Both the position numbers and the translations under genes were made by a program. A stretch of DNA of 64,000 nucleotides from Ylistrum balloti (lineage: Eukaryota): assembly GCF_031769215.1 (NCBI RefSeq), contig NW_026782072.1, forward strand, positions 1,116,001 through 1,180,000, in the 5' to 3' direction. The notes beneath the pieces were generated by a model, which worked only from the letters and a program-made list of their open reading frames with translations, was not told where the DNA came from and searched no databases. Of this stretch, positions 745 to 4,769 are shown in pieces (within the stretch, counting starts at the first letter, position 1; every line of letters starts with the position of its first letter).

Positions 745-1470
745 TTGTATCCCCCTTATTTATACATTGTACTATAAATCCTAGATTATCACAGGATTGT
801 AACGATATTTATACATTGTACTATAAATCCTAGATTATCACAGGATTGTACCCATATTTATACATTGTACTATAAATCCTAGATTATCACAGGATTGTAC
901 CCATATTTATACATTGTACTATAAATCCTAGATTATCACAGGACTGTACCCATATTTATACATTGTACTATAAATCCTAGATTATCACAGGATTGTAACC
1001 ATATTTATACATTGTACTATAAATCCTAAATTATCACAAGATTGTACCCATATTTATACATTGTACTATAAATCCTAGATTATCACAAGATTGTACCCTT
1101 ATTTATACATTGTACTATAAATCCTAGATTATCACAGGATTGTACCCATATTTATACATTGTACTATAAATCCTAGATTATCACGGGATTGTACCCATAT
1201 TTATACATTGTACTATAAATCCTAGATTATCACGGGATTGTAACCATATTTATACATTGTACTATAAATCCTAGATTATCACGGGATTGTATCCTTATCT
1301 ATACATTGTACTATAAATCCTAGATTATCACAGGATTGTATCCTTATTTATACATTGTACTATAAATTCTAGATTATCACGGGATTGTACCCATATTTAT
1401 ATATTGTACTATAAATCCTAGATTATCACGGGATTGTATCCTTATTTATACATTGTACTATAAATCCTAG
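745..1470. repeat. 49-bp minisatellite, ~15 copies
   Basis: Unit TTTATACATTGTACTATAAATCCTAGATTATCACAGGATTGTACCCATA; TATACATTGT at 761 and 810 gives the period. Confidence 0.97.
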
Positions 1471-1587
1471 AGATAAGATCCAGAATATGTTTCTAGCTTT
1501 AGACAACGGTTTCGATTCATTTTCTTATGTTTTTCGGAACACATGCGGTATATATATATAAATGATTTTTGACAAAAGAAGAAAGAC

Positions 1588-1641
1588 GTTACATTTTGCA
1601 CTAGCGCTTTCACTGTATTAGATCTTCAGGTGCATAGTAAC
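1588..1641 (-). ncRNA. Minimal (Penelope-type) hammerhead ribozyme motif, left arm
   Basis: Exact reverse complement of the motif at 1990-2043. Confidence 0.65.
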
Positions 1642-1989
1642 TGTACATAATGGTGTGGCGTCACAACATGTTATTCGATTGGTTTCAGATGAAAAAGTAT
1701 ACAGGGGGAAGATTTGGAAAAAGCCGTCGTTGCATCCTGCTATGTGTCGGCTGATTGGTAGATGTCTATATCTTTCGTGGGATATTTGTTCGCGATGTAA
1801 TGTTACGCGTTTGCGGAGGTTTTCTGTTTCAAAGAGAAGCCAAGGAGTCAGAAATTATAAACATTTTAAAACCAGACTTGAATATTAATGTTTAACCGCA
1901 TTGTAAAGTTTGCAAATTATAATTATGCCCCTTTTATATTATGACGTCATCAACAGATAACATGTTGTGACGCCACATCATTATGTACA

Positions 1990-2043
1990 GTTACTATGCA
2001 CCTGAAGATCTAATACAGTGAAAGCGCTAGTGCAAAATGTAAC
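1990..2043 (+). ncRNA. Minimal (Penelope-type) hammerhead ribozyme motif, right arm
   Basis: UGCAC-CUGAAGA-ucuaauacagu-GAAA-gcgc-UA|GUGCA. Stem I is 5 bp plus a GUUAC/GUAAC extension, stem III is the palindrome AGCGCU, and predicted cleavage is after A2029. Stem II is weak (2 bp with a U-U closing pair). Confidence 0.65.
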
Positions 2044-2096
2044 GTCTTTCTTCTTTTGTCAAAAATCATTTTTATTTATAATTTACTCGCATCTCG

Positions 2097-2132
<36 letters not shown>

Positions 2133-2257
2133 AAAACTTGATTTGACGAGATGCGAGTATATATATATATATATAGTCATTTCCATTTACATACCACTTA
2201 CCAAATTAATGTCATATTACAAGTACATAGTGGTACACGATTGTTCAGCGAAAAATA

Positions 2258-2271: not shown

Positions 2272-2542
2272 AACGAAATTTGATAGAAAATCACTCGCGG
2301 TCCTTATAAAATAGCTATCATGTTTCGTATTTACCGACAGCATAGCGGCTTTCTAGTTTCAGTTCCATACCAGTTTGTCATTTCCGCTCAAATTGTTATT
2401 TCGTTCTCTTGATGATAACGGGATCTTGTTTATTGAGTTGAATCTTCACCACAAAAAATACAATGTTGTATCATATTGTAAGGTATCGTTTGTTTTATAC
2501 TGTTTATATAAGTAATCGTCAAACTGAAAATAAAAACCTTCA

Positions 2543-2944
2543 CAATATGTGTCTAAGCTATGTATAACACAGAAACTGTTACAAATACCAGCAGTATTGT
2601 ATCTGTTAGAACTGATATATATAACATAGAACAGATACCTAACAATATGTGTCTGAGCTATGTATAACACAGAAACTGTTACAAATACCAGCAGTATTGT
2701 ATCTGTTAGAACTGATATATAACATAGAACAGATACCTAACAATATGTGTCTGAGCTATGTATAACACAGAAACTGTTACAAATACCAGCAGTATTGTAT
2801 CTGTTAGAACTGATATATATAACATAGAACAGATACCTAACAATATGTGTCTAAGCTATGTATAACACAGAAACTGTTACAAATACCAGCAGTATTGTAT
2901 CTGTTAGAACTGATATATATAACATAAAACAGATACCTAACAAT
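2543..2944. repeat. ~100-bp tandem repeat, 4 copies
   Basis: CAATATGTGTCT starts at 2543, 2643, 2741 and 2841; the copies are near-identical. Confidence 0.95.
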
Positions 2945-3263
2945 AAACACGGTTTAGTTTTTTGCTTGTAATTACTATTTTAGCGGGAGGGGGTTTGAGG
3001 GCCGAGTGGGATGGAGAGGGACATACCTGCTACGAAAAAAAAATGAAACATACTTACAGCTTATCGAATTTAGACAACAGTATGGGAAAGGGTATGTATT
3101 TTATTCTCATTTACATTTCTCGTTTATTGTTCCTATTTAATGGTCATATCTAATAATTTTAACTAATGGTAAAGTAATACAGACGCACATTATGATTTCA
3201 GCAAACATTTGATCTCACGGTGTTTTATTTGTTTTACAGTGAGCCACGTTAAACCACACGCCA

Positions 3264-4769
3264 ATGGGAGATGAGATGTTTCCTGTGTCCTTCTCTGTAA
3301 TATTCGCGGTATTGATAGCAGCACAATTTCTCCTTGGACTTGTTCTTAATCTTGGAATTCAGATAAGTGCATTATCACAACAAATCTTCCAGGTGAAGAG
3401 TGGCAACTTGTTTGTTCGGACACTAGGCTGGATCGACGCCCTGATATGCTTAACATTGATGCCCTGTACGTTTGTAATAATTGTACTTTTTCCCAGAGTA
3501 AATATCGTACTGTGTGCCGTTCATGAGGGTGTGATATCAATGTCTATATCGGCAACGACGACATGTGTTTTGTTTATATCTCTGGATCGTTACGGGGCCA
3601 TTGTTACTCCAACTTCTCAACGACTTACACACAGAAATGTCCTCTATATTAACATACTAATTGGCGTGGCCTCGGTTTTGGGGTTTTTGTTCCCTTTGGT
3701 GTGTCTCTGCTTCGTCACTTCCATAGACGTTCTGACACAAATGACATCATCGGGAATGTTTTGTCGTGACCTTTTATTGAACGCAAATTCGGTTTACATC
3801 TACGAAGTGTATTTTATCAGTCTGGCGTCAGTCTCTACCATTACAACTGCGATATGCTACGTGAAAATCTACAGAACCGCTAAAAAGCGGATGAAGGCAA
3901 GACAAACGACTGTAATGAATAACGAGGGTGAAAGGACGGGTGGGCTTAGAATTTTGTTTAAGTTTCATGAACGGAAAACGGTTTGGCTTTCACTGGCAAT
4001 TGTTTTCACATTTTTCCTTTCATGGGGACCTTATATTCTCATCGCTATATTACAGATATTGATGCACATAACACTTCCATTAGAGATGTCTAAAATGGGT
4101 CTTCTATCACTTGGGATGATTTCAACAGTTCTACATCCGATATTCTACACATTTCTCAATAGAAGGGAAAGTCGGCGTGATCAAATGAAACGAATAATGA
4201 TAGACGCTGGTAGTGGAGGTCGATTACGTGAATATCGAAGCCAACAGGAAACGACCTCGGCAGTACAAAGCCTTGTACATAAGACGATTTCACAGAGCAT
4301 CTCGATCGGTGTGGGCAATAAACACGACATGGAAATATTTACAACATGCCAAGAACCGCCAAAAACAAGTTCAAGCGAAACTGATGACGAGGTGTTTGAA
4401 CATGAACACAGCCATTTAAGTGTATCACGGAAATTATTTTCAGGAAGAAAAGACAGACACACCTCCTTTACAGATCATAGCGGACGAGAGTCGTCCATAT
4501 CGGAAGCCAGTGGTAAAAAGCTTCCTTTGTCTTTCCGATTGTCTATTGATCTGGATTACGTGAAATTTCAAAGTGAAACTATTGAAACAGAGAACTGTGC
4601 TCCTGAACCCAGCACAACATCACTTAGCGCCGATAGATGTCAAACTAATTCAACACTTGTCGAAACAGCTGACAGTGTAAGTGTTAATATAGAGTCAGAT
4701 GGAAGACGGAAAGCACGGAATAGCCAGGCCAGTGTAGGACAGTATACAAATGCAGCATTCGAACCTTGA
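3264..4769 (+). CDS. GPR22: Class A orphan GPCR, GPR22-like, intronless CDS, 501 aa
   Basis: Seven hydrophobic segments with LDRY, SWGPY and LHPIFY motifs. IDALICLTLMPCTFVI, CAVHEG and LDRYGAIVTPTSQRLT closely resemble vertebrate GPR22 (LDVIICVGCIPLTIVI, CCFHEA, LDRYDISVKPANRILT, FHPLLY) as I recall it. A splice acceptor GTTTTACAG at 3231-3239 implies a 5' UTR intron. Orthology is from memory, not from a search. Confidence 0.85.
   Translation: MGDEMFPVSFSVIFAVLIAAQFLLGLVLNLGIQISALSQQIFQVKSGNLFVRTLGWIDALICLTLMPCTFVIIVLFPRVNIVLCAVHEGVISMSISATTTCVLFISLDRYGAIVTPTSQRLTHRNVLYINILIGVASVLGFLFPLVCLCFVTSIDVLTQMTSSGMFCRDLLLNANSVYIYEVYFISLASVSTITTAICYVKIYRTAKKRMKARQTTVMNNEGERTGGLRILFKFHERKTVWLSLAIVFTFFLSWGPYILIAILQILMHITLPLEMSKMGLLSLGMISTVLHPIFYTFLNRRESRRDQMKRIMIDAGSGGRLREYRSQQETTSAVQSLVHKTISQSISIGVGNKHDMEIFTTCQEPPKTSSSETDDEVFEHEHSHLSVSRKLFSGRKDRHTSFTDHSGRESSISEASGKKLPLSFRLSIDLDYVKFQSETIETENCAPEPSTTSLSADRCQTNSTLVETADSVSVNIESDGRRKARNSQASVGQYTNAAFEP

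What the first reader, a model, noticed from the sequence alone, without database searches (positions are those of the whole stretch)
1549..2175. Fold-back Penelope mini-insert with twin hammerheads and an inverted but complete GIY-YIG C-terminus
Seen: this looks like a 510-bp MITE with 114-bp TIRs, but each arm contains a hammerhead motif. The interior holds two abutting halves of one stop-free GIY-YIG C-terminus on opposite strands: 52 aa on minus (1830-1675) and 22 aa on plus (1827-1895), overlapping at a 4-bp TTTC microhomology. A third tiny inverted tail lies at 2084-2159, and all ends sit in (TA)n. Known: Penelope-like elements carry minimal type I hammerheads with palindromic stem III that are thought to act as dimers, and they often insert with inverted pLTRs. 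Inference: this is a young snapshot of the inversion mechanism, and a transcript from either strand would carry a ribozyme about 1.2 kb upstream of the GPCR.
Basis: partly seen in the sequence, partly recalled or inferred. Interest (0 to 1): 0.72.

Follow-up and report, generated by a model that had tools for sequence, protein, structure and literature searches.

The report
Rearranged Penelope-like retrotransposon fragment in (TA)n
This is a one-off, scrambled 3'-end fragment of a young Penelope-like retrotransposon inserted in a TA microsatellite about 1.2 kb upstream of a receptor gene; it shows how these elements insert, but it is an ordinary product of a known element class.

Summary
Window 1551-2080 is a fold-back with 124-nt arms at 98% (114 nt once TA-rich ends are discounted), two stop-free peptide pieces on opposite strands, a small inverted tail, and (TA)n at every end.

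The predicted parent exists. More than 20 copies in the genome read ...SSETNR-I-QREAKE... on one strand. The longest copy encodes a reverse transcriptase plus a C-terminal GIY-YIG endonuclease with a CX4CxxC linker, so it is a Neptune/Nematis-type Penelope-like element (PLE).

Both window junctions are unique in the genome, so this is not a MITE. The first junction has 3 nt of microhomology (TAT). The second is blunt, not "TTTC". About half of 38 sampled insertions carry head-to-head inverted arms. The 3' ends fall at two discrete sites 33 nt apart (the PLE "tail") and nearly all sit in (TA)n. All of this is published PLE behaviour.

The hammerhead motif is real at motif level and covaries with a better-formed motif in a sister family. 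Its helix II has only 2 bp, and Rfam finds neither version. In a read-through transcript of this fold-back the motif would sit inside a 124-bp hairpin with no sense partner, so cleavage here is unlikely.

Verdict: a new member of a known kind, of modest interest. I could not check the assembly against reads.

The parts
1549..1560 (.). Left block of the target (TA)n microsatellite
   Evidence: Sequence. Family 3' ends are almost always followed by (TA)n.
1561..1674 (-). Inverted arm: reverse complement of the element's 3' UTR segment T (reference copy positions ~2345-2458). It starts near the 'short' RT start site and carries the hammerhead-like motif in sense on the minus strand (about 1641-1588; core 1629-1599).
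1672..1674 (.). Junction 1: TAT, a 3-nt microhomology where the inverted arm skips 127 nt of the parent (positions 2218-2344) and lands at parent position 2217
   Evidence: Overlapping BLAST segments; sequence comparison. The junction is unique in the genome.
1672..1829 (-). Inverted 158-bp ORF piece (parent 2060-2217). It encodes ...TENLRKRVTLHREQISHERYRHLPISRHIAGCNDGFFQIFPLYTFSSETNR(I), the GIY-YIG domain downstream of the YIG motif.
   Evidence: 100% identical to several parental copies
1829..1830 (.). Junction 2: blunt join of parent position 2060 (inverted) to parent position 2218 (direct), with no microhomology. The inverted landing point (2217) and the 5' end of the direct arm (2218) abut exactly.
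   Evidence: unique in the genome
1830..1895 (+). Direct arm, end of the ORF: QREAKESEIINILKPDLNINV plus stop codon (1893-1895). It contains the conserved Glu and Asn region of the GIY-YIG domain.
1896..1956 (+). Direct arm, first 61 nt of the 3' UTR. This stretch is absent from the inverted arm.
1957..2080 (+). Direct arm, segment T (parent 2345-2468) with the hammerhead-like motif at 1990-2043. Stem I is GUUAC..UGCAC / GUGCA..GUAAC; core CUGAAGA 2002-2008; helix II U-CU-AAUAC-AG-U 2009-2019; GAAA 2020-2023; palindrome AGCGCU 2023-2028; predicted cut after A2029.
2081..2098 (+). Partial 'tail' (parent 2469-2490 of 2469-2501), an unusual 3' end 11 nt short of the usual tailed end
2099..2129 (.). 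Middle (TA)15.5 block
2130..2160 (-). Inverted tail-only piece (parent 2471-2501). It spans almost exactly the interval between the two RT start sites. Its boundary is unique in the genome.
2160..2175 (.). Right (TA)8 block of the microsatellite

Best explanation
Window 1549-2175 is a single, dead, non-amplified insertion of 3'-terminal pieces of a young Penelope-like element (PLE) family into a (TA)n microsatellite. The family has a reverse transcriptase, a C-terminal GIY-YIG endonuclease and a CX4CxxC linker, so it is of Neptune/Nematis type. In coordinates of a natural long copy (2501 nt), the insert reads rc(2345-2468) | rc(2060-2217) | 2218-2490 | (TA)15.5 | rc(2471-2501) | (TA)8.

Shown: the anatomy, the contiguous parental arrangement, the uniqueness of both junctions, a 3-nt microhomology at one junction and a blunt join at the other, and the family-wide habits. 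Those habits are head-to-head arms, two discrete 3' ends 33 nt apart, and (TA)n targets.

Inferred mechanism: the element's endonuclease nicked both strands of the self-complementary TA repeat, and reverse transcription was primed from both nicks. This matches what has been shown in vitro for another PLE. The top-strand cDNA started at the short start site and copied 114-124 nt of the 3' UTR. It then switched by TAT/AUA pairing to position 2217 of the RNA and copied back to 2060. The bottom-strand cDNA started in the tail and stopped at 2218, exactly where it would meet the other cDNA on the same template. A blunt end-to-end template jump then joined the two.

The hammerhead-like motif in each arm is the family's normal pLTR motif, inherited passively. 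In this fold-back it is not expected to cleave.
For: Parent contiguity: 20 or more copies read ...FPLYTFSSETNRIQREAKESEIINILKPDLNINV* on one strand. Element class: the longest copy (L032) has a 622-aa frame with RVT_1 (E 5.6e-8), then after one in-frame stop a 137-aa frame with GIY-YIG just under Pfam's cutoff (E 1.9e-4, 22.1 vs 22.6 bits). A second copy scores GIY-YIG at E 5e-7, above the cutoff. The CX4CxxC linker and the CPKC...H...H motif are visible in the translations, which are the diagnostic features listed in PMC8557442. Uniqueness: only the window itself spans either 71-nt junction probe. Family habits: 20 of 38 sampled insertion complexes hold pieces in both orientations. Of 51 distinct 3' ends, 24 are at 2497-2501 and 27 at 2466-2474. 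23 of 24 tailed ends are followed by (TA)>=3, and the short ends merge into TA runs. In 16 of 16 two-armed insertions one arm is tailed and the other short. Independent analogue: contig C846 has a 14-nt short-site start, then a TG-microhomology jump to 2219 and back to 2130, next to a direct arm 2186-2501. The 34-nt overlap in both orientations cannot come from simple DNA inversion. Literature: a purified PLE protein cleaves and extends both strands, initiates at two internal sites that define the tail, and prefers AT-rich DNA (PMC11167929). Inverted 5'-truncated copies, a tail at one end, and (TA)n targeting linked to the CX2-5CxxC linker are described in PMC8557442.
Against: The order of events and the use of one RNA by both reverse transcriptases are inferred from end points only. 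The origin of the partial tail (end at 2490) and of the inverted tail-only piece is not resolved; they may come from the same event or from an earlier abortive one. Clade assignment rests on motifs, not on an RT phylogeny. No intact master copy was found; the longest copy has an in-frame stop and an inverted arm at its 5' end.
Confidence: 0.75

Rival explanations
1. The locus first received an ordinary PLE insertion: a short inverted arm plus a direct 5'-truncated copy, rc(2345-2468) + 2060-2490. The 158-bp segment was inverted later by DNA breakage and repair.
For: The ordinary architecture is common in the family, for example C579, C85 and C95. An inversion keeps neighbouring coordinates abutting by definition, which would also explain 2217|2218.
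Against: One breakpoint would have to coincide exactly with the pre-existing arm-to-arm junction, and the TAT microhomology would be chance. The analogous C846 insertion has a 34-nt overlap in both orientations, which inversion cannot produce. There are no inverted repeats flanking the 158-bp segment to mediate an inversion.
Confidence: 0.13
2. The fold-back is an assembly artefact: a chimeric or palindromic read consensus in a repeat-rich, TA-rich region.
For: Complex PLE insertions are known to trouble assemblies (PMC8557442). The junctions are unique. Reads could not be examined.
Against: Junction 1 shows the same type of jump, to nearly the same landing site, as an independent locus (C846). 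The two arms differ at a few positions, as two real sequences would. The structure obeys the family rule of one short and one tailed arm.
Confidence: 0.06
3. It is a MITE or other non-autonomous DNA transposon with 114-bp terminal inverted repeats.
For: It has terminal inverted repeats and is small; the TA flanks could hide a TA target-site duplication.
Against: No second copy has this architecture. Every part is a piece of a retrotransposon's ORF and 3' UTR. Other copies show variable 5' truncation, typical of reverse transcription.
Confidence: 0.01
4. The insert has been co-opted. It would act either as an active ribozyme pair or as a hairpin source of small RNAs regulating the GPCR 1.2 kb downstream or the PLE family.
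For: The motif shows structure-preserving differences from a sister family. A 124-bp perfect hairpin is a plausible Dicer substrate. The direct arm points towards the GPCR.
Against: There is no evidence of transcription. The copy is 98-100% identical to dead paralogues, so there is no sign of selection. The hairpin would block ribozyme folding, and there is no sense partner for a dimer.
Confidence: 0.05

Closest known systems
Canonical C-terminal-endonuclease Penelope-like elements of the Neptune/Nematis type (Arkhipova 2006; Craig et al. 2021, PMC8557442)
   Same: [quoted passage not shown] CX2-5CxxC linker (here CX4CxxC). Two Cys inside the GIY-YIG core. Heavy 5' truncation. An inverted 5'-truncated copy next to the direct copy. 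An optional 30-40-nt tail (here 33 nt), on one arm only. (TA)n target preference. A hammerhead-type motif in the pLTR/3' UTR.
   Different: No RT phylogeny was done, so Neptune versus Nematis is open. No intact full-length or tandem (direct pLTR) copy was seen in this assembly. The window copy additionally has an internal template jump that places an ORF piece on the inverted arm.
Poseidon PLE of Anolis carolinensis (PAc) in vitro system (Frangieh et al. 2024, PMC11167929)
   Same: Cleavage and extension of both DNA strands. Two adjacent internal RT start sites that define the tail. AT-rich targets. A hammerhead not needed for insertion. The scallop family's genomic footprints match all four.
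   Different: It is a different clade and host. In vitro no difference between strands in start-site use was seen, whereas here two-armed insertions always pair one short with one tailed end (16/16). That asymmetry is not explained by the in vitro data.
L1 'twin priming' inversions (Ostertag and Kazazian 2001; from my own knowledge, not read here)
   Same: An inverted upstream segment is joined to a direct downstream segment of the same RNA. The break points abut or overlap slightly, and microhomology is used for internal priming.
   Different: Here the internal primer is not bare target DNA. It is a cDNA already extended by 14-124 nt from the element's own start site. The element class and endonuclease also differ.
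Minimal type I hammerheads of PLEs (Cervera and de la Pena 2014, PMC4209133; Lunse et al. 2017, not held in the library)
   Same: Type I topology, core CUGANGA...GAAA...UH, a 4-nt palindrome forming helix III only in a dimer, an extra nucleotide after A9, and a location in the PLE terminal repeat.
   Different: Published min-HHRs have a long helix II (6-8 bp) with a conserved G10.1-C11.1 pair. The window's variant has 2 bp flanked by U...U. The sister family in this genome has 4 bp plus a GNRA loop, also flanked by U...U.

Membership tests
Penelope-like element (EN+ with C-terminal GIY-YIG) | Single ORF with a reverse transcriptase followed by a GIY-YIG endonuclease in the parental element | tested here: met
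   L032: RVT_1 E 5.6e-8 in a 622-aa frame, then GIY-YIG E 1.9e-4 in the next 137 aa (22.1 bits, just under the 22.6 cutoff). L024 ORF: GIY-YIG E 5.1e-7, above the cutoff.
Penelope-like element (EN+ with C-terminal GIY-YIG) | CCHH-type motif with two Cys inside the GIY-YIG core, and a CX2-5CxxC linker (Neptune/Nematis) | tested here: met
   The translations show ...CREKRCGTCQH... upstream and VIYLILCPKCGSFYIGQT...LHREQISH within the core. Criteria are taken from PMC8557442. Checked by inspection only.
Penelope-like element (EN+ with C-terminal GIY-YIG) | Insertion anatomy: 5' truncation, an adjacent inverted 5'-truncated copy, an optional 30-40-nt tail | tested here: met
   20 of 38 complexes have both orientations. 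3' ends are bimodal at 2466-2474 and 2497-2501, giving a 33-nt tail.
Penelope-like element (EN+ with C-terminal GIY-YIG) | RT groups with PLE/telomerase-like RTs in a phylogeny | not tested
   No tree was built; the costly protein searches were not used because the domains were already clear.
MITE / non-autonomous DNA transposon | Many copies with the same TIR-bounded architecture | tested here: not met
   Only the window spans either junction probe.
MITE / non-autonomous DNA transposon | Fixed-length target-site duplication | tested here: inconclusive
   Both flanks are (TA)n, so no duplication can be read.
Hammerhead ribozyme, type I (PLE min-HHR) | Conserved core CUGANGA / GAAA / UH in type I order, with stem I closing the motif | tested here: met
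   2002-2008, 2020-2023, U2028-A2029. Stem I forms in the MFE fold.
Hammerhead ribozyme, type I (PLE min-HHR) | Helix II of several base pairs with G10.1-C11.1 | tested here: not met
   Only C2010-G2018 and U2011-A2017, flanked by U2009 and U2019. The fold z-score is 0.0. The sister family has GGCC/GGCC plus a GCGA loop.
Hammerhead ribozyme, type I (PLE min-HHR) | Palindromic helix III allowing a dimer | tested here: met
   AGCGCU (self-duplex -8.3 kcal/mol). The sister family has AACGUU, so the palindrome is kept through a double change.
Hammerhead ribozyme, type I (PLE min-HHR) | Match to a curated covariance model | tested here: not met
   No Rfam hammerhead family matches at E<=10 in 161 nt or at E<=1 in 6 kb. 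The well-formed sister motif is missed as well, so the models are blind to this min-HHR type.
Hammerhead ribozyme, type I (PLE min-HHR) | Structure-preserving variation between relatives | tested here: met
   32 sequences: 86.7% of cells paired vs 73.0 +/- 1.4 in shuffles (0/500); covariation score 0.349 vs 0.153; slid controls 23-34% paired. This reflects essentially two lineages, so few independent events.
Hammerhead ribozyme, type I (PLE min-HHR) | Self-cleavage after H17 | not testable with these tools
   Needs in vitro transcription of monomer and dimer.

The most novel reading that the evidence does not exclude
Two things are not excluded. (1) The family's hammerhead variant with only a 2-bp helix II flanked by U...U could be catalytically competent as a protein-assisted dimer, which would make it one of the most reduced natural hammerheads. 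(2) The genomic footprints could record an obligate asymmetric dual-strand priming step in PLE integration. These footprints are 16 of 16 two-armed insertions pairing one 'short' with one 'tailed' start, a recurrent landing site at parent positions 2217-2219, and exact abutment of the two cDNAs. Under this reading the two reverse transcriptases of a dimer use the two start sites of one RNA and collide. That would go beyond what the in vitro system has shown.
Probability: 0.2. Interest if true: 0.55.

Novelty: new member of a known kind. Interest (0 to 1): 0.3.

Why it matters
PLE integration is the least understood of the major retrotransposon mechanisms, and only one in vitro system exists (PMC11167929). 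Young, barely mutated insertions such as this one, and the roughly 40 relatives sampled here, preserve break points at single-nucleotide resolution. They show in vivo that both strands of a palindromic (TA)n target are used as primers, that two start sites 33 nt apart are used, and that template jumps occur with 0-3 nt of homology. These are useful constraints for anyone modelling PLE integration. For the host the locus is most likely neutral junk in a repeat-rich stretch upstream of a GPCR gene. The observation adds detail to a known picture rather than changing it.

Tried and rejected
1. Rfam scans gave no hammerhead hit for the window motif, the longest copies or the sister family. I rejected this as evidence against the motif because the clearly structured sister motif is also missed. 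The miRNA-like hits at 2083-2160 are only the TA-rich palindrome of tail and inverted tail.

2. RF00163 over the whole genome finds other hammerheads in 45-nt tandem arrays. Only 73 of about 100,000 candidates were scored, so it says nothing about this family.

3. Dimer folding with RNAcofold prefers pairing through the AGAUCU palindrome, which overlaps G8 and A9, rather than through helix III. It therefore gives no support for an active dimer. Energy models cannot decide this.

4. A search for a full-length intact parent found only three copies reaching beyond about 1.5 kb. The longest has an in-frame stop and an inverted arm at its 5' end, so the true 5' end and any direct pLTR remain undefined.

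5. I tested whether every 'single' copy hides a tiny inverted arm. It does not: no remnants were found upstream of 16 single copies.

6. The hit at C645:878315 that seemed to cross junction 1 is a parental arrangement with a chance 6-nt extension.

7. A search for other tail-only pieces with the same boundary found none.

I did not attempt it by another route.

A natural copy (L032) served as the coordinate reference.

Full report
**What is in the sequence.** Window 1551-1674 and 1957-2080 are inverted repeats of 124 nt at 98%. Between the arms, 1830-1675 on the minus strand translates without stops to 52 aa ending ...FPLYTFSSETNR. On the plus strand, 1827-1895 translates to FQREAKESEIINILKPDLNINV*. 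To the right, 2081-2098 is followed by (TA)15.5 at 2099-2129. Then comes a 31-nt piece (2130-2160) whose 5' half is the reverse complement of 2084-2098, and then (TA)8. A (TA)6 run lies at 1549-1560.

**The parent exists, and the window copy is a rearranged derivative.** A search of the window's own genome (648 Mb; earlier notes on this window call it a scallop, which I did not test) returned 137 matches. In nearly all copies, window 1672-1829 lies on the opposite strand, directly adjacent to window 1830-2080. Read on one strand, these copies give ...GCNDGFFQIFPLYTFSSETNRIQREAKESEIINILKPDLNINV*.
- The longest copy (L032, contig C70) has a 622-aa open frame with RVT_1 (E 5.6e-8). After one in-frame stop there is a 137-aa frame with GIY-YIG.
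- Another copy scores GIY-YIG at E 5e-7.
- The translations show a CX4CxxC motif (CREKRCGTC) upstream of the endonuclease and CPKC...H...H inside its core.
- According to Craig et al. 2021 (PMC8557442), this combination marks canonical C-terminal-EN Penelope-like elements (PLEs) of the Neptune/Nematis type and excludes Hydra, Naiad and Penelope/Poseidon. I did not build an RT tree.

**Coordinates and junctions.** I used the natural copy L032 as a ruler of 2501 nt, with no consensus built. The window reads rc(2345-2468) | rc(2060-2217) | 2218-2490 | (TA)15.5 | rc(2471-2501) | (TA)8.
- Junction 1 (window 1672-1674) is a 3-nt overlap, TAT, shared by both parental sequences.
- Junction 2 (1829|1830) is blunt.
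- Neither junction occurs anywhere else in the genome. The insert has therefore not been copied as a unit, and the MITE reading fails.

**The family's habits.** I sampled 38 insertion complexes, and 20 contain pieces in both orientations, tails outward.
- Of 51 distinct 3' ends, 27 stop at 2466-2474 ('short') and 24 at 2497-2501 ('tailed'). These are two discrete sites 33 nt apart.
- 23 of 24 tailed ends are followed by at least three TA units, and the short ends run straight into TA.
- Many 5' junctions of single copies also abut (TA)n.
- These are the published hallmarks of PLE insertions: heavy 5' truncation, an adjacent inverted 5'-truncated copy, a 30-40-bp tail often at one end only, and (TA)n targeting associated with the CX2-5CxxC linker (PMC8557442).
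- Frangieh et al. 2024 (PMC11167929) showed in vitro that a PLE protein cleaves and extends both DNA strands. It initiates reverse transcription at two adjacent internal RNA sites that define the tail, and it prefers AT-rich DNA.
- One regularity stands out. In all 16 two-armed insertions, one arm is short-ended and the other tailed. If end types were independent this would have a chance of about 1e-5. The literature mentions 'a tail at one end' only qualitatively.

**How the window copy most likely arose (inference).** A TA repeat is its own reverse complement, so the endonuclease sees the same site on both strands.
- I propose that both strands were nicked and both 3' ends primed cDNA synthesis.
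- The top-strand cDNA began near the short site and copied the 3' UTR segment back to 2345. Its ...TAT-3' end then re-paired with AUA at 2215-2217 of the RNA, skipping 127 nt, and copied on to 2060.
- The bottom-strand cDNA began in the tail and stopped at 2218. That is exactly the nucleotide before the other cDNA's landing point, which is what a collision on one RNA template would give.
- A blunt end-to-end template jump then joined the two cDNAs.
- An independent insertion on contig C846 supports a replicative origin. There, 14 nt from the short site are followed by a jump with TG microhomology to 2219 and back to 2130, next to a direct arm 2186-2501. The 34 nt present in both orientations cannot result from inverting finished DNA.
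- A third locus (C365) also has inverted internal pieces from 2120-2214 next to a direct arm starting at 2211. Break points therefore cluster around 2206-2219, but I did not test that cluster statistically.
- The rival, a later DNA inversion of the 158-bp piece inside an ordinary two-armed insertion, needs a breakpoint to coincide with the old arm junction. I give it about 13%.
- The partial tail (end at 2490, unique among 51 ends) and the inverted tail-only piece are unresolved. The tail-only piece spans the interval between the two start sites, and its boundary is unique. They may belong to the same event or to an earlier abortive one in the same microsatellite.

**The hammerhead question.** Each arm carries, in sense on its own strand:
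- a stem I of 5 + 5 bp (GUUAC..UGCAC / GUGCA..GUAAC);
- the core CUGAAGA, then GAAA;
- the 6-nt palindrome AGCGCU;
- UA, with the predicted cut after A2029.

Helix II is only C-G and U-A around a 5-nt loop, flanked by U and U. The 62-nt RNA is no more stable than its shuffles (z = 0.0). No Rfam hammerhead model matches, even at E<=10 in a 161-nt search.

That silence is not informative. A sister PLE family in the same genome (about 40% amino-acid identity in the ORF end) carries at the same place a well-formed version that Rfam also misses. It has stem I AUCAC/GUGAU, then U, GGCC-GCGA-GGCC, U, then GAAA, the palindrome AACGUU and UA.

The extended pattern occurs 197 times in the genome, against 0-3 for the reversed control. 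That count includes 41-nt tandem arrays of the sister type. Across 32 distinct instances the proposed pairs hold in 86.7% of cells, against 73.0 +/- 1.4 for shuffles. The covariation score is 0.349 against 0.153 (0 of 500 shuffles reach it), and slid controls give 23-34% paired. The two lineages differ by double, pair-preserving changes in stem I, helix II and the helix III palindrome. This amounts to few independent events, but it shows the window motif is a homologue of a genuine PLE minimal hammerhead (Cervera and de la Pena 2014, PMC4209133) with a strongly reduced helix II. More diverged relatives (76-86% identity) keep the reduced form. Whether it cleaves cannot be decided computationally.

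In this particular insert cleavage is unlikely. Either transcript contains one sense motif plus its perfect complement and folds into a 124-bp hairpin (-265.7 kcal/mol). There is no second sense copy to form the dimeric helix III. Published work also shows the hammerhead is dispensable for insertion in vitro (PMC11167929).

**Context.** The ORF at 3264-4769 is a rhodopsin-family receptor (7tm_1, E 1.3e-21), 1184 nt downstream of the right arm. The interval and the upstream region are full of minisatellites. Nothing suggests that the insert has a function for this gene.

**Limits.** I did not try another route. Genome searches score only the best candidates, so copy numbers are lower bounds. 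Clade assignment is by motif.

**Verdict.** Three points fail: the claimed microhomology, the 'complete GIY-YIG' wording, and the functional reading of twin ribozymes. It is a new member of a known kind, and its value is as a clean in vivo footprint of PLE dual-strand priming and template switching.

Noticed in passing
G000:C101:2307403-2308010 (locus L079 covers part): Tandem array, period 41 nt, of the sister-family minimal hammerhead (CTGAAGAT-GGCCGCGAGGCC-TGAAA-ACGT-TA-GTGATAAAAC). It resembles the 'non-LTR retrozyme' arrays now proposed to derive from PLE ends (bioRxiv 10.64898/2026.07.22.740005).
   Followed up: partly
G000, e.g. C874:485752-486065, C348:515462-516041, C36:1273684-1274456: Rfam Hammerhead_1 hits above the gathering score in 45-nt tandem arrays. 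This is a different, canonical type I hammerhead satellite in the same genome.
   Followed up: no
family-wide: In all 16 two-armed insertions of this PLE family, one arm ends at the 'short' site (parent 2466-2474) and the other at the 'tailed' site (2497-2501). Single copies are about 50/50. No explanation was tested.
   Followed up: partly
window 753-1471: 49-bp minisatellite, 14.7 copies, 95% matches, directly upstream of the insert. There is also a 41-bp repeat x3.1 at 554-678.
   Followed up: no
window 2542-2945: 100-bp (or 198-bp) tandem repeat, 4.1 copies, 97% matches, between the insert and the GPCR start.
   Followed up: no
window 3264-4769 (+): Intronless 501-aa rhodopsin-family GPCR ORF (7tm_1, E 1.3e-21) with a long Ser/Thr-rich C-terminal tail.
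   Followed up: partly
L011 (G000:C14:106260-106345): Another mosaic copy. A short inverted piece of the ORF end (reverse complement of ...DLNINV*) and a duplicated GCCAAGGAGTCAGA lie upstream of a direct arm starting at parent position 2215. This suggests template switching is frequent in this family.
   Followed up: no
L028 (G000:C179), 5' junction: A 5'-truncated copy abuts a long (CA)n/(TH)n-coding run rather than (TA)n, an exception to the TA target rule on the 5' side.
   Followed up: no
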